A DNA stretch of 64,000 nt, from contig NW_020846770.1 in assembly GCF_003704095.1 (NCBI RefSeq), positions 186,001-250,000 on the forward strand, read 5' to 3'. The DNA is from Pocillopora damicornis. Taxonomy: Eukaryota. This document shows, piece after piece, positions 2,277-56,400 of this stretch (its first letter is position 1; each line of letters begins with the position of its first letter). Both the position numbers and the translations under genes were made by a program. The notes under the pieces are model-generated. The model had not been told where the DNA came from, made no database searches, and saw only the letters and a program-made list of their open reading frames with translations.

Positions 2277-2470
2277 TATGTTTCGATATCAGGTAATTTA
2301 GTGTTAACAACTGGGTTGAAAACGTAAATTAGCCACCGTAAAGAGTAAAAAAGCTGACGTTTCGAGCGTTAGCCCTTCGTCAGGGCGATTCGAAACGTCA
2401 GCTTTTTTACTCTTTACGGTGGCTAATTTACGTTTTCAGCCCAGTTGTTAACACTAAATTACCTGCTATA

Positions 2471-2515
<45 letters not shown>

Positions 2516-2538
2516 TTTATTCATATGTTTCGATATCA
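2277..2538. mobile_element. Penelope-like inverted pseudo-LTR insertion nested in the LINE, with 15-bp target-site duplication
   Basis: Direct repeat TATGTTTCGATATCA at 2277-2291 and 2524-2538. Inverted arms about 2290-2365 and 2390-2465, followed by an unpaired tail to about 2523. Confidence 0.75.
2353..2386 (-). ncRNA. Minimal type I hammerhead ribozyme-like motif
   Basis: Minus strand reads gcc-CUGACGA-a-GGGC-uaac-GCUC-GAAAC-GUC^agc. It has the core boxes, a 4-bp stem II and the minimal GAAACGUC stem III. Stem I has a C.A mismatch next to the core. Confidence 0.6.
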
Positions 2539-4777: not shown

Positions 4778-5040
4778 GACTCGTTTTTTTTCCTTTGGTC
4801 TCGAGCGTGCAACAGAGGAAAAAAGTCTGAATCTCCATAAGAAATCGAACCTCAGACCTTCGGGTTCCGCGCTCCGATGCTCTACCACCGAGCCACAGAA
4901 AATGTACGATGAGCGATTTATTCTGATCACGAGCATGACATTTTTGACGTTGGATCTTAGTAGCATGCAGGATGAATGTAACATATGAACCTCGTAATGG
5001 CTTCCCTCACCCTAAAGACTCTGTGGCTCAGTGGACGGAG
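4778..5040 (-). mobile_element. tRNA-derived SINE-like repeat
   Basis: Minus strand has an A box (TGGCTCGGTGG) and a B box (GGTTCGATTTC) in a tRNA-like head. A second head fragment (CTCTGTGGCTCAGTGG) lies in the opposite orientation at about 5019-5034. Confidence 0.65.
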
Positions 5041-10277: not shown

Positions 10278-11229
10278 TTATAGCTCTAATTCAATTGTGA
10301 GTCCAAAGTGATCGGACACAGATTCATTTTTCCTTGTTTCTAACTTTATAATCTCTTTTCTCACCACTGAAACTTTAGAGCTGATGAAAATCGCATCGTA
10401 GTTACCACCATCTTGGTTGGTTTCCATTCTCTCTGGAAAAACAGACTGAAGTCCAACTTGACGCATTATTTTCAAAAGCTGTTGATATTCATCGCTTTTT
10501 TCACTTGTAGTCGGATGGTGGTTGTCAATATTAAAATCTCCAGCCACAATAAAGTGTGAATCTGAATTAAATTCCTGTAGGGCAGCGGCGAGTTCCCTTG
10601 CTTGTGAGAGCCTGGCATTAACTCCATGGGGATCTAAGTGTGTATTAATGACATAAAGGCGTTGGGAATTGACTGAGAACTCTCCAACAACAAAACCCCT
10701 ATAATCAGTAACTTGTAGGATGGAGTAGTTGAGATAACTTCTTGATGTGGTATTTACTAGAGGTATACGACTAAATATAACAATACCACCACTCTGCCCT
10801 ACATATGGTGCGGTAAAATCTGCTATTGACGTTCTGTATCGAAATCCACGTTTCGTCATGGCAGCAACCATTAATGTAGCACATTTTGTGATTACTGCGA
10901 CTCCAGCGTTCAAAACGTACGCCTCTTGAATGAGTACAATGTCAAAATCATTTATTCCTTCTGCAAGACATTCAATTCTTTCTTCAAGACTCAAAATTGT
11001 GTGAGGTTTTAAAAAGTCACACCATAAGTTATAAGTAACCAGCCGAAGGTTCTTTCTGTGAGTCAATGTATGTTGTTCTATTCTGTTACTTTCTTGGACA
11101 ATGTGACGAAAAAGCATTCTTTTTTCGTAGCTGAGTCCTCCACTCCAGATATTGGAACCAAACAGGAAGATTGCCGCAGCTAACGCGCCAATGACAAGTG
11201 TAGGCTTTAAATAGTCCCAAAGTGATTGT
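10278..11229 (-). CDS. Endonuclease/exonuclease/phosphatase (EEP) family protein, sphingomyelinase-like, with N-terminal membrane anchor; main exon only
   Basis: Motifs TYNLW, IQEAY, NTHLDP, AGDFNID, YDAIF and SDHFG. The frame stays open upstream of ORF 10278..11117 through LVIGALAAAIFLF to a phase-2 acceptor (ttcctctatcattgcag, AG at 11231-11230). First exon not located. Confidence 0.85.
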
Positions 11230-14474: not shown

Positions 14475-16241
14475 ATGGAGCATTCTAGAGCAAGGTAAAT
14501 GTGGTCTAGTATCGAAAAAAGAGAGACCACGGTGTTGTAATAATGACGCCATGGCTTCTCCCTGGTAATAATGGGTAAAATTTCAAAAAGATGCTTTCGA
14601 GTGCACTATTCGAGTGTAAGTAGCCGCGAGTGAATTTTTCAGAGACGACAGATGAGCTCGTTTAACTTGAAGTCTTGAAAAACTGACAAGTGCTTATTTA
14701 CACCAAGTCAAACGAGAAATCATGTCGTTACTTATTTACAATTTGCATGAAAAAGGCATCACAGAAAAACAAGACAGACGAAATTTGGACATCGTACGCG
14801 CTAATTGTAATTTGCACTCGTGTTTATACAGCTTTGTGTATCATGACTCTGAGGCTAAATGCTCCGCTGCCGGGCACGATCTCAAAATAAATTAAATTCT
14901 CGGCAGTCAGAAATTTTCATAGAATTTCCACTAGAACGTTCCTGTAATCTTCTTAAGAATAGCACACATTAGTTAAAAAAAGAATGTCAAGCGTTTTCAT
15001 AAATTATTTTTCTTTATTGTTAGACAAATTCTCCCAGCTTGTGCATCGCTCGGTTGTCGCCACTTAGAAATTTTACACTTCTGGTCAGACTGCCGAGCAC
15101 GGACTCAAATGGACTAAATGCCCTGCAGTTATAAATTGAAATATTCACAGAAATGGAATAGTGAATGAATCGATAATTAATATTATTATCTTGATTTCAC
15201 CATGATCTCTGACAGAGATAAGTGATAAGAAGTGTAAACAATCTGTCAGTCTTATTTCTGCTATCACTGATCAGAAGTTCTTTTAAATTTTCCAGGTCAC
15301 TAAAAATACCTGCTCAACTGCGTAAGAAACATGCACTTGCTGTTGCTACAGTTCCAGTGATGCTCCTTATCATCTACTACGTTTTTAATGCATTACAGGA
15401 TGATAAAAAAATGCTATTTAATCAAGTTACTCAGCATGAGAATATGAAAAAAGGAAATCCTACTTTCAACTTGGAAAGGAATCTACTATTGGTGAGTTAT
15501 AACTTATGGTGCACACTATGGCATTCTCATGGTGTTGAGGAAAGAATTGAAAGTCTTGTTGAGGGAATAAAGGATTTTGACATTGCTCTGATTCAGGAGG
15601 CATACATCTGGAATTTTGGAGTGGCTGTGTTCAAAAAATGTGCGTCACTCCTTGTTGTGGAAATGGAGAAACATGGATTTCACTTTAGAACATCCATCTT
15701 AGATTTTGTCCCCCCCTTTGGACAGAGTGGAGGTGTTGTTATATTTAGTCGTATACCATTAGTAAGAACAATTTCAAAACAATACAACTCCTCAATCTTC
15801 CAATATTTGGTCTATAGAGGTTTTGTAGTTGGAGAGTTCTTCATCAACTCCAAGCCCCTACATGTCATCAACACCCATTTAAATCCTACAGGAGTTGATT
15901 CTCGGGTTCAACAAGCAAAAGAATTGGCCAGGGCCATGAAAGACTTCAATCTGAATTCACACTTTGTTGTGGCTGGAGACTTTAACATTGATAACAATTA
16001 CCCCACAACTAGTAACAGTAGTACGGAATTTAGAAAACTTCTAGAAACAATGAGTGAAACAGGCCTCCACTCTGTTTTTCCAGTACGAATGGAGACTAAT
16101 ATTGATGGTGGTAACTATGATGCAATGTTCATTAGTTCTAATGTTGCTGTGGTGAGAAAAGAGATCATTAAGCTGGTAACCAAAAAGAACAAATTTGTCT
16201 CAGACCATTTTGGCCTTGTAGTTGAACTAAAACTCTGGTAA
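14475..16241 (+). CDS. EEP family protein, sphingomyelinase-like, type II membrane paralogue; probable exons 14475-14494 and 15296-16241
   Basis: Motifs SYNLW, IQEAY, NTHLNP, AGDFNID, YDAMF, SDHFG and TM segment ALAVATVPVMLLIIYYVF. Acceptor ttttccag at 15295 is phase 2 and matches candidate exon 1 ATG GAG CAT TCT AGA GCA AG|gtaaat (inferred). Confidence 0.85.
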
Positions 16242-16320
16242 CATACTTGCACAGTAAGCTTCAATACAGTGTAATTAGTCAGCTGGTACAATACTATTTA
16301 AGATACTCCTCATTTATTTA

Positions 16321-16555
16321 TATATCTGAAGGTTGAACTAACCAATAAGACATAACTTTTCTGTGACTCTGAGTTTCATGCTTACGCAATCATCAGACAG
16401 ATTTTAATGATTAAGATCAGTCTGATGATCGTTTAAGCGTCAAACTCAGAGTCGCAGAAAAGTTATGTCTTTACTGATTACTTGAACCTTCAGATATACC
16501 ACGCTCTGCGAACACATCGAGCACTGTACGGCAAGGATAGACTATAATCAAGATT
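16321..16555. mobile_element. Penelope-like inverted pseudo-LTR insertion in a TA-rich site
   Basis: Imperfect inverted arms about 16321-16398 and 16420-16498, plus an unpaired tail ending at a (TA)n run. Both arms carry hammerhead cores. Confidence 0.65.
16360..16401 (-). ncRNA. Type I hammerhead ribozyme (putative, complete fold)
   Basis: UCUGU-CUGAUGA-U-UGC-GUAA-GCA-U-GAAA-CUC-A-GAG-UC^ACAGA. Stem I is 5 bp, stem II has a GNRA loop, stem III is ACUC/GAGU and the cleavage triplet is GUC. The 10.1-11.1 position is a non-canonical U.U. Confidence 0.7.
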
Positions 16556-16727
16556 TTATATATATATATATATTCTATTCTGGCAAATGCTATTTCTTTT
16601 TCAATCTCGTTTCCTCAAGAGTGTCAGGTTTACTCATTGCAGCTGCCACTTTTATTTGTTATTTGTTAAACTTGAGTCAGTTGCTGGTTCACTGAGAAAA
16701 AGAATCAGTTGTATTTTTGCATTATTA

Positions 16728-16802
16728 TGAAGCAGGCTTCTACTATGTTTTTCCAGTACCAATGGAGACTAATATTGATGGTGGTAAGTATGATGCAAAT
16801 GT
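16728..16802 (+). repeat. Local duplication of an EEP coding fragment (copy of about 16055-16128)
   Basis: tgtttttccagtac(c/g)aatggagactaatattgatggtggtaa(g/c)tatgatgcaa occurs at both positions. Confidence 0.85.
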
Positions 16803-17293
16803 GGTTTATATGATGCATTCTTACTTAAATTTTAGACTGGAATCTTTGTAAACACATGCTCTCATTCTTGATACTTGGCATCCACATGGTTTCTTTTCTA
16901 TGTTTCAAATTAGTCTTCTGTAAGTTAGAAGGCTAGAGCTGTAAAAAGTTTGACACCTTAAATAAGTTACATGTCAATGTAAGTGTAGGTGATTGTATGT
17001 GTATTTGTGGGCTGATCATAAAAACACATGGCAAAACAGTTAATATATGTAATATTTTAATGGCAAAGAGTTTCTTTGAAAGCAATTTCCAATTAACCAT
17101 CTGCACCAGCAATCAATGAATTTGAATAAGTTTCCTTTGAGACTTTGAATATTCTGTGACACGAGATTACTGATGGCTTATGAGAGAATTTCACAAAAGG
17201 GTATCTAATTATTCTACTTGAGAATTGCACAGACAAGCACATCCAGATGGGCATTTGCTGAAGCATTCAGGTAAAAAGTGCACTGGTGCAGAG

Positions 17294-20200
17294 TTAGTGC
17301 CTGTCACCTTTTTTACCAGCCACCTGACAAGAATAAATAATTAAAAACAAATTACTTTTATTGATTATTACAATATAATTGTTAAAACAAACATTTAGAT
17401 AAATATGTGACAAATTAATAACAGTAAAATAAACAAAAACAGTAGTAAATTAAGTAAAATAACAATAAAATGGACAAAGTAACCAATCTTTGTTAACAAT
17501 GTAACTGGAGGTTTCTTACCCTTTTAAATTCCTCCATATTGGTTGAATCCAGAGGGCTGCCAATAAATCCAATATACTCCACAACAGTTGTTTCTTCATT
17601 GCCTTGGTTGTTTTGAAAAAATAACTGCAGAAAACACAAATATTGAATAAATACTATCACAAATAATTCATTGTTTTACTGTGTGAATAAACTGAGGCAA
17701 CAGCCAAAGAATTGTTGTTTCTCTCATGCCAATTGATCTACAGGCTTAGTCAGTCACGACAAGTTGTCAGGACAAATAGCTGCAGAATACACACCTATAA
17801 TTTTTTCTCTAGTCCATAACTATACCAAAAAAAACCTGGCAAAGGACTGGGTTGTTACAGAACTGTTACAGATGACTTTCCCAAAAAAACTTATATGAAA
17901 AATGAATAATTATGCAATGTGTCAGTGTTCAGAGGATAAACAGACTACTAGTGAGAGCAAAAGAAAGACTGTAAAGAACACAGCTTGTATCAGTACTTCA
18001 GCTTATCAAATTTCCTTGGCTAAGGTGAAAGGGTTAGAAAAACAAACTGGTAAATTTAACATGTATAATCCCTCTTTTCAAGATTTAAGGAACATGAAGT
18101 AATAAAAAAGAATTCAATTTAACTAACCGTAAGGCTTTGGACATTTTGAAATTTGACAAACTTCAGTGGAATGATTGCATCCTCTGTTAAATCTTCTGGT
18201 GTTAACCTATTTAACATGGAGTGGTTAATATGGCAATACAGTACATAGCTAAACAAGACTAATTATCACAGCTACTGCTATGAGCTTATCCCAGTTTCTG
18301 TGACATGAAGTGACACGAGTATTGTGACTACTCCTGGATGGGTGCAAGTGGTAACATCCAAATTCTATACCAGATACATGTAGTTCCCAGCAGGTTTTTA
18401 AATTTACATTTTAATTTGCCAGTAAACATTTACACCACGGATGCCAGAGTTAAGTGGTTCTTTTTTTTTTTTTTTTAAGAACACAAATGGGGTAAGCCAT
18501 ATAGGACTGAAACACCTCAAGTTTGTGATTAGGGTTTGCTTGTGATGACCATAAAGGCTGCTGTATATATCTTGTGTTACTTTTACTGGTACAGACAAGG
18601 AAATTATCGAAAATAAAGATGAAGGCTAACTAAGAAGCCACTTGTTCTTATTTGGAACAAATTCAATTGAAATGTCAATAGTTCACTTTGCATCTTAATG
18701 TTTTTGGAAGAGAAGTCAGAACAATATGGCATACTCAAGAGTTTGCAGTGCTTCAAAGCTCTCTGCTGAGTCAAAATCCATGCTTTTTGTGTGGTTAATG
18801 AACAACTTGACTGTCTTTGGTCCTCTACCTGCAGTGAGTGAAAGAGAAAATAAATCAGAAACATTTTATAATAAAATCTAGTAGGTTGAAATGTATTAAC
18901 AAGAACTGGAAGGTTACTGACCCTGCTGTCAGCACCAGAAAATGACCCTTTTTTGATTGACACTTACCATTTCCTGGTCCTTGAATCTTGAGTGAGTGTA
19001 GCTTGATAGTCTGATTGAAAGCTATCGTTATAAGTAACTAAAAAGACAATTGTAGAAATCCTCCATTACTGATCATTATCATAACTCAAACAAGGAACAT
19101 TGTGGCTTGATGAACTTTACAATTCATTGCAGTTATGAGTGTTTTGAGAAAATGCAGTCAGTGGTCAGAGCCACAAATTCTTAGTCTGGAAGGTGTAGCT
19201 AGTGTAAGTGTGGATGACAGCCTGGGTATGAGACAACCTGGTTGGGTTCAACACATTTAATTTTGTTCTTGGGTAGGAAACATTACTTTCTCTGTGCTTC
19301 TCTCCAAAAAGGGATATAGATAAGACTGAAAAACACGTTGAATGTATGGCTGGTATTACTCATGATTAATTAGCTCCCCATCTACAAGGAGTCCAGTTCT
19401 TGAGTCACAAAATAATGCTTTGTTTTATGGGCAACAAGAGTATTTAAGCTTTGGACTTACAGCTCATCAGATCAATACGTTATTTAGAATTTCCAAACAG
19501 CTATCCTCAATTTCAAAATGAGCCCCAGTGCAAAACTTTTCAAGTGAGAGTGAGTTTTGTTTGCATCATAGTAATCATTAATTTTGAATTCATATCAAAG
19601 GCTTCATGGCCTTGACTTCATTTTAAAACAAAGGCATAAGGTACCTTTGAAATGGTCTATTCAAGTACAGCTATTAACAGGAGTAGATTGTGTTCCTCAG
19701 CACAGACTACATGTTAATGGTGAATTAGATTGTTTTGCAGTTTATGTACCTGTTCATCACAGTCACTTTCTAAGAAGTCAGGTCCCTTTGCCAGAGCAGC
19801 TGACAGATGGTGGTCATCACTTTCATTTAAACATTCACATCCACTCTTGTTAATAAATATTCCTAAATCCATCTGAAACATTAGTATTGATATCATAATT
19901 AATACTTAAAATGGATCCAATAAAAGGTAATTTTTGTCAGTTGTGATCTATGCAAAAATATCCCTCATTAAATAATATAATCAGCCCTAGTGCTTCTTGT
20001 GTCTTCCAACTTAATGCTGTTACATACAATACATTTAAAGCACAATTCACAAGGGGTGTTGTGAGCTCTGCACAATCTTTGAGATCTACATTTATTTTAT
20101 TGTGTAAGCCTGCGATTTTCTGGTAATTTCTAATAGAAGGTACCTTTAAAATAATTATACCTACCAGTATGCTCAAATATAGTTGTACAAAGTTAAGTGA

Positions 20201-53427: not shown

Positions 53428-56400
53428 TTAAGCATAGGAAAAAGGATGCAATTTCCTATGTTTTCTGCTTTGCAAAACGCTTTTTTCATTCATTCTTTCA
53501 TTTTTTTCTGTCTCGTTCTTTATAGGCAAAATCCATGGCGTGCGTGCCAAAATATGCATTATTGTTTTCACACGATGGCACAAAAGGGCTAAAAACTGGG
53601 CAAAGATTATCCCCCCATAGGTGATTAGGAAGCTAAGTGCGATGACATCGAGCCCTAAAATCTTGAGGTCTCTCTTTTCTACCAGCGTCAGTATAAGTAC
53701 CATCCAAAACATGTTGCTGACACTGAATACCCACAGCGCTGTTGTTCTAAGCTTCCGGAGGTTTTCTTCGGGAGAAGACGTGAACGCTAAAGCTGTGTTA
53801 TGCGGAGAAAGAAATCCTTCTTCAAGTAATTCTTTCCAGAAGGTTATTTCGTCTTCAGGATAGTCCTTGCTATCACGCTTGACAGGCAGAACACTATTCA
53901 GTGTATGCTCCGTGCTGAGGATTGTCATCTGTACGTGTCCTGAAAATGAAACAAGAATACTGGGTTATTACAAATCAGTCTACTTGGACGAGAGCGGACG
54001 AAGTAAGCAAAATATTGATTGAACCATAACGTAACGTGGGGAGGCAGCTTAGACTAAAAGAAAAAAACGGCGTCGAAATAAATTCGGACGTTACAGTTGT
54101 TGCCACAAACTTCTTAGCCCTGTTTCTACCAGTATTATGTTGATGGAAATTTATCAGAAAAGGTGAAGAAGTGGTTTGTACACACCAAATTACCAAAACC
54201 TTGCCATATGTGATGATCAAAACTGGGTGTAATAGCCGTTTCCAAGTTCTCACGAGTCTAAGATCTAGTGTCGAAATTAAGGCTCGAGTCGGTAACTAAA
54301 TGAAACAGTCGTGGTAATTAAAATAAGCAAAGGTTTCTCGTAAATTACAGACTTTGAATTCAGCTCGCAAACGACGATTCTTTTTGTTTCATTGCGCAAA
54401 TTACAGTTAGCCCTCGCTACGAATCAGCAAGAAGAAATATTGATAATTAAAAAAAGAGTAAAAAATGATGACATCAGTACAGCTGAGGCAAGGCTGCATG
54501 CGGACGCCGAATGAGAACGGTGGAATGTTAGGGAAGTTGTCCCTCCAAACATTCATACTTTATGAGTCTGGCAATTCTCTCTCGTTCGTAATTTCTCCTC
54601 GAACAGTAATTTGTGGTCTTTTTCAGAAACGGCTGGTTCTATCCGCTCAGTTGCTGCAGCCTTCTTGGGACTGCTCGCTTTAACTGTTGTTCAATCATGG
54701 ATAATTTTTTCTATTAACGAAAAACAACTGCGCTACACTCAGTGGCCATGATATTTCCGTTCTGAAACTTTGCACTCCGCTCTCACGCACGCTAAAAGTT
54801 TACGCTGATTATTGATATGTTTATTGATACTACGCAATCGAACAACGTTTTTCTGTGCATCATGATCCGAGTGTTCTCTGATAAAGAAACCTGAGCTGGA
54901 TCATTTCAAAGGAATGCAACCTTAGATTGACCGCTGCTGGTCGGCTTGCAAACATTTCAGACAAAGAAATCTCCGAAATAACAATACCTTTCCCAAATGG
55001 GTGGTGGTAGGTTGTTGAACTAATTATTTAATCAGTTAATAAGTACAATGCTTACGAAGCACGCATAGATTTTCCTATGAATCATCACAAGTGCAACTCT
55101 AATACCATCGCTACGTCAAACAAGGATAATGAAAAGGTCCTGGCAAACAACCGCATCATGCAGAATATTAGAGTACTACGTTGCAATGATTTAAACTTTG
55201 CTTACCTTTCACCTGTAAACTGCAAACAGCCTTAACCAGCCTTTTAAAATGGCCCGGTTTTTCGATTCCAAAATTTTTCCTTGCGGATTCCTTGAAATCC
55301 TTTTTGGGCTCGTTTTTCAACTTTTGAAGTTGCCATAGATGCTTAAATTTCTCACCGAATTTGGAATGATAATCTTCGAGATGGTGCTTTATCAACCAGC
55401 CTTTAATGTTTTCCTGATAACAAAGGTTAATCAAGGAACATCAGCATTCACCATTGGGCATTCGTTGTAGTTAGTATCTTTATCGATTTTGTTTCTTCCC
55501 TTATTGGCAGTTGGAACAAGAATGCAAAAGCAGATTTTCAGATATATGTGAATTCTGGAATCTTAAAAAAAGCATTGTTTTTAAAACGCTATTGTTTAAA
55601 CTGTAAGATATTGCGTTAATGAAATCCTTGGTTTTCCAATACAATAAGAATGGTTTTCTCAATAAACAGTCCGTAGCATAATGACAGCTGTGAAATTTCA
55701 GCTTTTCACCATGGCTCGTTTTTGCACTCCAAAGAAGTCATTGGGTTAACTGGTGATGATGACCACCTCATGGGTTTCAAAGGTAATCCAACCGTTTGCA
55801 AACTGCCTTCGAAGAGGCCAAAACGTCGACCACGATTCTGGCAAGACATCTTGGCTTCCTGAATTATGATTCGTTTAGTAAACTTACTGGTATTTCTTGC
55901 TTTGAATCATCTTGAGGAATCCTCTTGATATACTCCATGAGCCTTGAATGATCCTCTTCATTGATTCCGATCTGCTCAAGATCCTAGCAGATCAAAGATA
56001 AATGTATGGATTTTTTTTTTTATTAGCACAAACAAATGATTTTAATTCATTTATTCCTGCAGCGATTACAATATTTTGGGGTACAAATGCCACGGGTTGT
56101 TCGGATGTGAAAAGAGAAGGATATTCGGAGTTTGAGTGGCCAGTGAAAGCGCTCCTTCATACGATATCCACTGCTTTAGTATATGTATGAATATCATTTG
56201 GATAATCTTTTGAAAAAAGAAAAAATTCAAATAATCTTTTGAAAAAAGAAAAAATTCAACCCTTTTTAATGCTAGTCTGCATGATTTTATAGTTTCTTAA
56301 AACCTTTTCCAAATAAGTAATTGATACATACGTTGGAATGTGTGTATCTTTTTACATTACAAGTGCCTCTTCCGCTCAACTATACCAAAGTCAAACTTAC

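What the first reader, a model, noticed from the sequence alone, without database searches (positions are those of the whole stretch)
16360..16401. Complete type I hammerhead ribozyme between the converging 3' ends of the EEP gene and TXNL1
Seen: the minus strand folds into a hammerhead with stem I UCUGU/ACAGA, CUGAUGA, stem II UGC-GUAA-GCA, GAAA, stem III ACUC/GAGU and GUC. Predicted cleavage is between 16365 and 16364. It is in TXNL1 sense, about 0.9 kb past the TXNL1 stop and downstream of a candidate AATAAA (tttatt at about 16651). Known: Penelope-like elements and retrozymes carry type I hammerheads. Inference: it could cleave TXNL1 read-through RNA before it runs antisense into the EEP gene. 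The U.U at 10.1-11.1 is a core variant and the stem III loop is very tight, so activity may be weak or need dimerisation.
Basis: partly seen in the sequence, partly recalled or inferred. Interest (0 to 1): 0.8.

Follow-up and report, generated by a model that had tools for sequence, protein, structure and literature searches.

The report
Penelope-like retroelement hammerhead, truncated inverted pair
The hammerhead ribozyme motif is real, but it is the standard ribozyme carried at the end of a common Penelope-like retrotransposon, here present as two truncated head-to-head copies in the TXNL1 3' UTR, and is very unlikely to be a purpose-built terminator.

Summary
It has all core nucleotides, stems of 5, 3-4 and 3 bp, and GUC with cleavage between 16365 and 16364.

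It is not a locus-specific device. It lies in one arm of a 178-nt near-perfect palindrome (16321-16498), and each arm is a copy of a dispersed repeat with at least 150 copies in this 234-Mb genome.

In longer copies the repeat sits about 100 nt downstream of an RT plus GIY-YIG ORF. That ORF has the Hydra-clade Penelope-like element (PLE) signatures: a CxCX5C linker, DKT, CxxC/CxH, and (TA)n targets. One locus shows hammerhead-ORF-hammerhead with 2.1-kb spacing.

Sister subfamilies carry the same hammerhead with a canonical G10.1-C11.1 pair and compensatory stem II changes. Position 7 varies, and position 17 is C, A or U but never G.

The window copy is a 5'-truncated inverted pair inserted in a TA microsatellite, with a ~57-nt tail on one arm only.

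PolyA RNA contigs place it inside the TXNL1 3' UTR. In that transcript the antisense arm would lock the hammerhead into a hairpin of -106 kcal/mol, against -56 kcal/mol with the hammerhead enforced.

Rfam hammerhead models do not score it. This is a known kind of element and of low interest.

The parts
16360..16401 (-). Type I hammerhead motif with an intact core. It has U.U at 10.1/11.1 and a helix III that is 8/9 self-complementary. C17 is at 16365.
   Evidence: The family model R1 scores it 88.9 bits.
16321..16410 (-). Left arm: short-form, 5'-truncated copy of the PLE 3' end. It ends in ...TCAGATATA next to TA-rich target DNA.
16410..16498 (+). Right arm: an inverted copy of the same unit. 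Its hammerhead is dead because G12 is replaced by C at 16441.
16499..16555 (+). Optional 3' extension ('tail') of the PLE unit, present on this arm only.
   Evidence: One search shows the extension shared by 10 copies. One search shows that 6 of 6 dimers carry it on exactly one arm.
16556..16576 (.). TA microsatellite remnant, the insertion target at the right border. The left border (16300-16320) is also TA-rich.
   Evidence: (repeat I4), and the family-wide (TA)n flanks.
16313..16318 (-). AATAAA in TXNL1 sense, immediately past the element. It is a candidate distal polyadenylation signal.
   Evidence: Use of this signal is not shown.
16651..16656 (-).
   Evidence: TXNL1-spliced RNA contigs continue past it.
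16356..17321 (-). TXNL1 last exon, with the stop at 17296-17294 and the 3' UTR as far as RNA contigs reach.
   Evidence: joint 17321/17518 and records 4, 10 and 16. for the stop.
15297..16241 (+). Last coding exon of the EEP (Exo_endo_phos) gene. Its RNA contigs run on to 16297-16458, into the palindrome.
   Evidence: (PF03372, E 1.6e-13).

Best explanation
The motif is the hammerhead ribozyme that a Hydra-clade Penelope-like retrotransposon (PLE) carries in its 3' region (pseudo-LTR).

Shown: at this locus two 5'-truncated copies of that 3' region sit head-to-head in a TA microsatellite, between the converging EEP and TXNL1 genes and inside the long TXNL1 3' UTR.

Inferred: the inverted pair arose in one integration event. 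The PLE endonuclease cut both strands of the self-complementary (TA)n target, and each 3' end primed reverse transcription on PLE RNA from one of two alternative start sites. This would explain the tail on one arm only. The two cDNAs were then joined a few nucleotides 5' of the hammerhead.

From the literature: within the element's life cycle the ribozyme is thought to process multimeric or read-through PLE RNA, acting as a dimer through its self-complementary helix III or with help from the element's protein.

Inferred: the window copy is a dead-on-arrival fragment. In TXNL1-sense RNA it is sequestered in a ~80-bp hairpin with its antisense partner, so it is not expected to cleave and has no dedicated role in TXNL1 or EEP expression.
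For: Repeat family:
- At least 86 BLAST matches and at least 150 covariance-model matches in the genome. All 150 scored candidates hit.

Link to a PLE:
- In L006, L010, L020 and L022 the unit lies about 100 nt downstream of an ORF ending in a GIY-YIG-like domain.
- At least 150 ORF copies are present.
- The AlphaFold model of a homolog hits reverse transcriptases, including telomerases, group II intron RT, R2 and LINE-1 (E 5e-7 to 1e-4).
- Weak GIY-YIG hits fall at the expected C-terminal position: Pfam E 0.0054 and TIGR01453 E 0.062.
- Hydra-clade signatures are present: CxCX5C, DKT, CxxC and CxH (against PMC8557442).
- (TA)n flanks are seen across the family.
- L030 has hammerheads 2094 nt apart on the same strand, flanking the ORF.

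Hammerhead validity:
- Subfamilies B and C carry the same ribozyme with G10.1-C11.1 and compensatory stem II changes.
- N7 is C 50, U 41, A 1. H17 is C 59, A 25, U 8, G 0.
- Covariation beats 500 of 500 shuffles and all slid controls.

Architecture:
- 18 head-to-head pairs among the 150 hits, with junctions 11 nt inside to 22 nt outside the model's 5' ends.
- The tail is on exactly one arm in 6 of 6 dimers.
- This matches the published PLE features of inverted 5'-truncated copies and a one-sided tail, and cleavage and extension of both strands from two RT start sites.

Sequestration:
- Fold energies.
- No cis partner in the window.
Against: - Rfam's hammerhead models do not score the motif.
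- The window subfamily lacks the G10.1-C11.1 pair that Cervera and de la Pena list as highly conserved in PLE hammerheads.
- Pfam and PDB sequence searches do not formally name the ORF. The structure model is of low overall confidence (pLDDT 56), and the GIY-YIG assignment rests on weak hits plus motifs read by eye.
- The twin-priming origin and the reason for the fixed junction are inferences.
- RNA data are unstranded contigs. They show neither RNA ends nor the absence of cleavage.
- Co-transcriptional or protein-assisted cleavage in vivo cannot be excluded.
Confidence: 0.85

Rival explanations
1. One reading: the hammerhead is a functional cis element that cleaves TXNL1 read-through RNA before it runs antisense into the EEP gene.
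For: - The core is intact and the motif is in TXNL1 sense.
- The region is transcribed, and TXNL1-spliced contigs reach it.
- Transcripts of the convergent genes meet inside the element. TXNL1 contigs end at 16356-16504 and EEP contigs end at 16297-16458.
Against: - The motif is inherited from a repeat with at least 150 copies.
- Contig ends inside an inverted repeat are expected assembly breaks.
- One contig (X8) runs straight through 15294-17321.
- The hairpin with the antisense arm is about 50 kcal/mol more stable than any fold containing the hammerhead.
- The monomer hammerhead fold is -3.7 kcal/mol, against an MFE of -9.5 kcal/mol.
- No cis dimer partner is present.
- The U.U at 10.1/11.1 removes the G10.1 pair.
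- PLE hammerheads are weak or protein-dependent in vitro.
Confidence: 0.04
2. The short 90-170-nt units are not mere truncations of autonomous PLE RNA. They are a dedicated non-autonomous, retrozyme-like or SINE-like RNA, for example one transcribed from a start site just 5' of the hammerhead and mobilised in trans by the PLE. The window pair would derive from that RNA.
For: - Monomers and dimer arms begin within a narrow interval, roughly 3-20 nt 5' of stem I, in two subfamilies.
- One direct pair with 171-nt spacing exists (C3204).
- Retrozymes are proposed to be PLE pseudo-LTR derivatives (preprint 10.64898/2026.07.22.740005).
- Cnidarians express such RNAs (PMC7229834).
Against: - Copies with longer 5' extensions grade into the ORF, as expected for simple 5' truncation.
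- No tandem array is present at this locus.
- No transcription start or circular RNA evidence was obtainable.
Confidence: 0.2
3. The palindrome is a Stowaway-like MITE (a DNA transposon with terminal inverted repeats and a TA target), and the hammerhead resemblance is accidental.
For: - It is a near-perfect 178-nt inverted repeat flanked by TA.
- Its best Rfam similarities are to MITE-derived plant miRNA hairpins, all far below gathering score.
Against: - Single arms occur alone far more often than pairs.
- The arms are collinear with the 3' end of an RT-encoding element.
- The arms are asymmetric, with a tail on one side only.
- The hammerhead shows covariation and position-specific variability across subfamilies.
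Confidence: 0.02
4. The long hairpin formed by the inverted pair in the TXNL1 3' UTR has been co-opted, for example as a Dicer substrate giving small RNAs against PLE transcripts, or as a 3' UTR stability element.
For: - The ~80-bp hairpin is very stable (z-score -15.8).
- It is present in polyA RNA libraries.
- Head-to-head pairs are common in the genome.
Against: - There are no small-RNA data.
- The arms have diverged to 85-87% complementarity, as expected for neutral decay.
- Nothing distinguishes this pair from the other pairs.
Confidence: 0.06

Closest known systems
Minimal/dimeric type I hammerheads in the pseudo-LTRs of Penelope-like elements (Cervera and de la Pena 2014, PMC4209133)
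   Same: - Type I topology with a short stem I (5 bp) and no loop-loop contacts.
- Short helix III with self-complementary sequence, suited to dimer formation.
- Located in the PLE terminal repeat.
- Mostly found as dispersed single motifs or as pairs on opposite strands.
- Several consensus families per genome, with covariation.
   Different: - The window subfamily has U.U instead of the highly conserved G10.1-C11.1. Sister subfamilies keep G-C.
- Helix III is longer (3 bp plus a 3-nt loop, with 9 nt that are 8/9 palindromic) than the 1-2 bp typical of min-HHRs.
Hydra clade of C-terminal EN+ PLEs (Craig et al. 2021, PMC8557442)
   Same: - CxCX5C linker, DKT motif, CxxC and CxH around the EN core, and no cysteines inside the GIY...YIG stretch.
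- Short element, with about 2.1 kb between the flanking hammerheads.
- (TA)n insertion targets.
- Closest named homologs are cnidarian (Nematostella, Oculina).
- Hammerheads are present.
   Different: - The clade assignment rests on motifs, not on a phylogeny.
- The one-sided tail here is about 57 nt in the window, and up to about 80 nt counted to the TA run, against the 30-40 bp described for PLEs.
Metazoan non-LTR retrozymes (Cervera and de la Pena 2020, PMC7229834)
   Same: - A small non-coding unit carrying a type I hammerhead.
- Abundant in cnidarian genomes.
- Thought to be mobilised by PLEs.
   Different: - Retrozymes are direct tandem repeats of 170-400 nt that give circular RNAs and usually have canonical, efficient hammerheads.
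- This locus is an inverted pair with no same-strand neighbour.
Rfam Hammerhead_1 (RF00163)
   Same: Same core, topology and cleavage site.
   Different: It does not reach the family's gathering score and is not even listed at E<=10.

Membership tests
Hammerhead ribozyme, type I | Conserved core: C3 U4 G5 A6 N7 G8 A9, G12 A13 A14, the A15.1-U16.1 pair, and H17 (not G) | tested here: met
   All are present at 16396-16365 (-). Across 92 family copies N7 and H17 vary freely (H17 is never G) and the other core positions are 92-100% conserved.
Hammerhead ribozyme, type I | Three helices around the core, with the open ends in stem I | tested here: met
   Stem I is 5 bp, stem II is 3 bp plus U.U, and helix III is 3 bp. 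Overall 92% of cells are paired. Nine pairs show changes on both sides, and 0 of 500 shuffles reach the observed values. The alignment was fitted to the model, so this leans in favour of the structure.
Hammerhead ribozyme, type I | G10.1-C11.1 closing pair of stem II | tested here: not met
   The window copy and subfamily A have U.U. Subfamilies B and C have G-C, and two copies have U-A.
Hammerhead ribozyme, type I | Scores at or above the gathering score of an Rfam hammerhead model | tested here: not met
   No hammerhead family was listed at gathering score or at E<=10 on 401 nt. The RF00163 genome scan gave nothing over the cut-off, but only 73 of about 31,500 candidates were scored.
Hammerhead ribozyme, type I | Site-specific self-cleavage 3' of position 17 | not testable with these tools
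   Only assembled, unstranded RNA contigs were available.
PLE-type dimeric/minimal hammerhead | Lies in the terminal repeat (pseudo-LTR) of a Penelope-like element | tested here: met
   It is about 100 nt 3' of the RT-EN ORF in L006, L010, L020 and L022. L030 has hammerheads on both sides of an ORF, 2094 nt apart.
PLE-type dimeric/minimal hammerhead | Short helix III whose sequence is self-complementary, so that two copies can form an extended helix III | tested here: met
   ACUCAGAGU is 8/9 self-complementary. The intermolecular duplex is -8.8 kcal/mol, and the monomer hammerhead fold is only -3.7 kcal/mol.
PLE-type dimeric/minimal hammerhead | Extra unpaired nucleotide between A9 and 10.1 | tested here: inconclusive
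   The U after A9 could be that nucleotide. A matching extra U would then precede G12, which has not been described. Reading the two as a U.U pair is equally possible.
Hydra-clade Penelope-like element | Single ORF with a reverse transcriptase followed by a C-terminal GIY-YIG endonuclease | tested here: met
   The RT fold is supported by Foldseek hits to telomerases, group II intron RT, R2 and LINE-1 (E down to 5e-7). The GIY-YIG assignment rests only on weak hits at residues 448-493 and on motifs. Pfam and PDB sequence searches were otherwise blank.
Hydra-clade Penelope-like element | CxCX5C linker, DKT instead of DKG, no CCHH cysteines in the EN core, and CxxC and CxH motifs | tested here: met
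   CxCX5C is present in L031, L006 and P0109. DKT is present in P0020, which is 82% identical to the L031 ORF. CxxC...E and CxH...N are present in L033, L006, L020 and P0109. All were read by eye against the description. DKT was not seen in a copy from this genome.
Hydra-clade Penelope-like element | Insertion into (TA)n, inverted 5'-truncated copies, and a tail at one end | tested here: met
   (TA)n flanks. Eighteen head-to-head pairs among 150 hits. A one-sided tail in 6 of 6 dimers.
Non-LTR retrozyme | Direct tandem repeats of 170-400 nt, each with a hammerhead | tested here: not met
   The window has only the two inverted copies. One direct pair with 171-nt spacing exists elsewhere in the genome (C3204).
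MITE (TIR DNA transposon) | Always occurs as a unit bounded by two terminal inverted repeats, with no relation to a retroelement | tested here: not met
   Most copies are single arms. The arms are collinear with the PLE 3' end.

The most novel reading that the evidence does not exclude
Subfamily A is a naturally propagating hammerhead lineage. In my sample of 92 copies it has 38 members, 29 with an otherwise intact core. It has replaced the metal-site pair G10.1-C11.1 by U.U and may still be catalytically competent, perhaps only with PLE protein or as a trans dimer. In addition, head-to-head pairs such as this one in the TXNL1 3' UTR could act as hairpin-versus-ribozyme switches or as sources of small RNAs against the element.
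Probability: 0.07. Interest if true: 0.5.

Novelty: new member of a known kind. Interest (0 to 1): 0.2.

Why it matters
It mainly matters as a correction. A textbook-looking ribozyme between two convergent genes invites a regulatory story, but here it is retrotransposon baggage, one of at least 150 copies.

Three modest points of value remain:
- It adds a well-resolved example of Hydra-clade PLE insertion architecture: a TA target, twin inverted arms meeting just 5' of the hammerhead, and a one-sided tail. This fits the recent in vitro finding that a PLE protein cuts and extends both DNA strands from two RT start sites.
- It shows a hammerhead lineage that tolerates U.U at 10.1/11.1, a cheap natural variant to assay.
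- It shows that Rfam hammerhead models miss this class, so family-aware searches are needed when annotating cnidarian-type genomes.

Tried and rejected
RNA family searches:
- Rfam at gathering score and at E<=10 gave no hammerhead family. It returned only sub-threshold similarities to MITE-derived plant miRNA hairpins, which reflect the palindrome.
- An RF00163 scan of the whole genome gave one sub-threshold hit elsewhere.

Naming the ORF:
- Pfam on the PLE ORF pieces and on homologs gave nothing, apart from a weak GIY-YIG hit.
- A PDB sequence-profile search was blank.
- NCBIfam gave only weak RT and group I intron endonuclease hits.

Ideas considered and dropped:
- The MITE reading was dropped once single arms and the ORF-linked copies were seen.
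- The tandem-retrozyme reading was dropped for this locus because there is no same-strand neighbour.

Limits of the evidence:
- The RNA contigs cannot give strand, RNA ends or cleavage. Their ends inside the palindrome are probably assembly breaks, so I draw no conclusion about cleavage from them.
- The compensatory C-G to U-A change in stem II within subfamily A is weak evidence on its own, because both changes are CpG transitions.
- The lower substitution rate at core positions (2.4% against 12-15% elsewhere) is inflated by model-based retrieval and by junction effects at the 5' flank.

Handling of the spliced model:
- I joined the TXNL1 exons only inside a local script, to translate them and find the stop.

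Full report
**Observation.**
  - Stem I is UCUGU (16401-16397) paired with ACAGA (16364-16360).
  - CUGAUGA is at 16396-16390.
  - Stem II has U.U at 10.1/11.1, then U-A, G-C and C-G, closed by GUAA.
  - GAAA is at 16377-16374.
  - Helix III is a three-base-pair stem around CAG.
  - GUC ends at 16365, so cleavage would fall between 16365 and 16364.
- A type I descriptor I wrote finds this as the only hit in the 64-kb window.
- Against a dinucleotide-preserving Markov null, the relaxed descriptor gives 0.225 hits per window. Only 3 hits in 600 simulated windows match the observed quality of stem I of at least 5 bp and a near-palindromic helix III. The motif alone is therefore suggestive rather than conclusive.
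- Rfam does not call it.
  - No hammerhead family appeared at gathering score on the window.
  - None appeared at E<=10 on 16200-16600.
  - None was over the cut-off in a partial RF00163 scan of the genome.

**Context in the window.**
- The motif lies in one arm of a near-perfect inverted repeat, 16321-16498, with arms 85-87% complementary and 1 nt between them.
- As RNA this folds into a single hairpin of -106.3 kcal/mol (z-score -15.8).
- The other arm carries the mirror copy of the motif on the plus strand with C in place of G12, at 16441.

**It is a repeat family.**
- The arm is a dispersed repeat in the window's own 234-Mb assembly, with 86 BLAST matches.
- With a covariance model built from 34 copies, all 150 candidates that the tool scores were hits. 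So 150 is a lower bound.
- Most copies are single arms.
- Eighteen head-to-head pairs occur among the 150 hits. They always have the 5' ends facing each other, and the model's 5' ends lie between 11 nt of overlap and 22 nt apart.
- The unit comes in two forms.
  - The short form ends in ...TCAGATATA.
  - The long form has an extra tail and ends in ...AATCAAGATT.
  - Both are followed by (TA)n or TA-rich DNA.
- In all six subfamily-A dimers I could inspect, exactly one arm has the tail. Given the overall frequency of long forms, about 0.36, this is expected by chance about 1% of the time.
- In the window the left arm is short. The right arm carries the tail (16499-16555) and abuts a TA run (16556-16576).

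**The repeat is the 3' end of a Penelope-like element (PLE).**
- In longer copies (L006, L010, L020, L022) the unit continues upstream, across about 100 nt, into an ORF whose C-terminus has GIY...YIG-like, CxxC and CxH motifs.
- That ORF family has at least 150 copies in the genome, many in adjacent inverted pairs.
- It has more than 2,000 homologs in public data. The few named ones come from Nematostella and the coral Oculina. The genome is therefore probably an anthozoan cnidarian. This is an inference.
- Sequence libraries barely recognise the protein.
  - Pfam GIY-YIG scores E 0.0054 at residues 450-493.
  - NCBIfam group II intron RT scores E 0.016 at residues 85-261.
  - NCBIfam group I intron endonuclease scores E 0.062 at residues 448-488.
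  - The PDB profile search was blank.
- An AlphaFold model of a homolog has low overall confidence (pLDDT 56), but its RT core is at 70-90.
- Foldseek matches that model to reverse transcriptases, including telomerases, group II intron RT, R2 and LINE-1 ORF2p, with E from 5e-7 to 1e-4.
- The ORFs show the diagnostic features that Craig et al. 2021 give for the Hydra clade of PLEs.
  - A CxCX5C linker.
  - DKT in place of DKG. I saw this in homolog P0020, which is 82% identical, and not in a copy from this genome.
  - CxxC and CxH motifs around the conserved E and N.
  - A short element.
  - Insertion into (TA)n.
- In L030 two hammerheads lie 2094 nt apart on the same strand, flanking the ORF. 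This is the canonical pseudo-LTR-ORF-pseudo-LTR layout.

**The hammerhead is a real, evolving ribozyme lineage.**
- Aligning 99 model matches resolves three subfamilies.
  - A, the window's type, has U.U at 10.1/11.1 and a CGC-GUAA-GCG or UGC-GUAA-GCA stem II.
  - B has GCGC-UUAG-GCGC.
  - C has GUGC-GUAA-GCAC.
  - B and C keep the canonical G10.1-C11.1 pair.
- Variation falls where the hammerhead allows it.
  - Position 7 is C in 50 copies, U in 41 and A in 1.
  - Position 17 is C in 59, A in 25, U in 8 and never G.
  - The other core positions are 92-100% conserved.
- The counting test supports the structure.
  - 92% of cells are paired.
  - Nine pairs have changes on both sides.
  - None of 500 shuffles reaches the observed values.
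  - All slid controls are lower.
- Three caveats apply.
  - The alignment was fitted to the model.
  - Retrieval favours intact cores.
  - Within subfamily A the C-G to U-A change is a double CpG transition.
- Individual genomic copies decay as expected. The core is intact in 29 of 38 A copies and 38 of 51 B/C copies.

**Comparison with the literature.**
- Cervera and de la Pena 2014 described minimal type I hammerheads in PLE pseudo-LTRs. They reported:
  - a short stem I;
  - a short palindromic helix III;
  - likely dimeric action;
  - low activity in vitro;
  - frequent single copies, and pairs on opposite strands.
- Craig et al. 2021 described inverted 5'-truncated copies, a tail at one end only, microsatellite targets, and hammerheads in Hydra elements.
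- Frangieh et al. 2024 studied a purified PLE protein in vitro. They showed that:
  - it cleaves and extends both DNA strands;
  - it starts reverse transcription at two internal sites whose interval is the tail;
  - its hammerhead needs the protein to cleave;
  - the hammerhead is dispensable for insertion in vitro.
- The window locus fits all of this.
- My reading of its origin is an inference from these papers and from the anatomy, and is not shown. I propose that both strands of a cut (TA)n target primed reverse transcription from the two alternative start sites, and that the cDNAs were joined just 5' of the hammerhead.
- Why the junction clusters there is open. It could reflect a defined RNA 5' end or AT-rich self-complementary microhomology.

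**Transcription and the regulatory idea.**
- PolyA RNA-seq contigs from three studies confirm TXNL1 splicing, with introns at 17322-17517, 17625-18127 and 18205-18732.
- Contigs joined to those exons continue through the last exon, past the AATAAA at 16656-16651, down to 16504, 16414 and 16356.
- EEP-gene contigs run on to 16297, 16385 and 16458.
- One spliced contig covers 15294-17321 without a break.
- The TXNL1 stop is at 17296-17294.
- These contigs are unstranded and break at repeats, so they say nothing about cleavage.
- Energetics argue against activity here.
  - The isolated hammerhead fold is -3.7 kcal/mol, against an MFE of -9.5 kcal/mol that mispairs the core.
  - Within the palindrome, the best structure containing the hammerhead helices is -56.4 kcal/mol, against -106.3 kcal/mol for the hairpin.
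- In TXNL1 sense the antisense arm is transcribed first.
- No second same-strand copy exists in the window.

**Verdict.**
- The identification as a PLE/retrozyme-type type I hammerhead is supported and made precise: a Hydra-clade PLE, subfamily with U.U at 10.1/11.1, present as a truncated inverted pair in a TA microsatellite.
- The proposed terminator function is not supported.
- This is a new member of a well-described kind and of low interest.
- The U.U variant and the regular dimer architecture remain minor points worth a bench test.

Noticed in passing
window 2277-2538: A second, unrelated hammerhead-like palindromic insertion (CUGACGA ... My type I descriptor does not accept it, because stem I does not pair in that register. 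It may fold as a long-stem-III form or act only as a dimer.
   Followed up: partly
window 16728-16798: A 71-nt fragment that is 92% identical to the 3' coding end of the EEP gene (16055-16125). It is in the same orientation and lies inside the TXNL1 3' UTR on the other side of the PLE pair. It looks like a small pseudogene remnant of a local duplication.
   Followed up: partly
window 10278-11117 (-) and 15222-16241 (+): Two paralogous Exo_endo_phos (PF03372) genes in divergent orientation about 4 kb apart. RNA contigs show that the second has an upstream exon, with a splice acceptor near 15295-15297.
   Followed up: partly
L010:1867-1908 (+); L014:465-507 (-); L036:2367-2409 (+): At least two further, unrelated hammerhead families occur in this genome. 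Their helix III sequences are perfectly palindromic (ACGCGU and ACAAGCUUGU) and both have G10.1-C11.1. The genome carries several PLE/retrozyme ribozyme lineages.
   Followed up: no
G000:C3204:53633-53689 and 53804-53860 (+): Two same-strand copies of the hammerhead unit, 171 nt apart. This is the only short direct pair seen among the 150 hits and could be a retrozyme-like tandem.
   Followed up: no
L012:738-794 (+) and L012:1532-1588 (-): Two copies of subfamily A in which 11.1 is A, giving a Watson-Crick U10.1-A11.1 pair instead of U.U.
   Followed up: no
window 4830-4902 (-): A marginal tRNA match (29.6 bits against a gathering score of 29). It is the only Rfam hit at gathering score in the window.
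   Followed up: no
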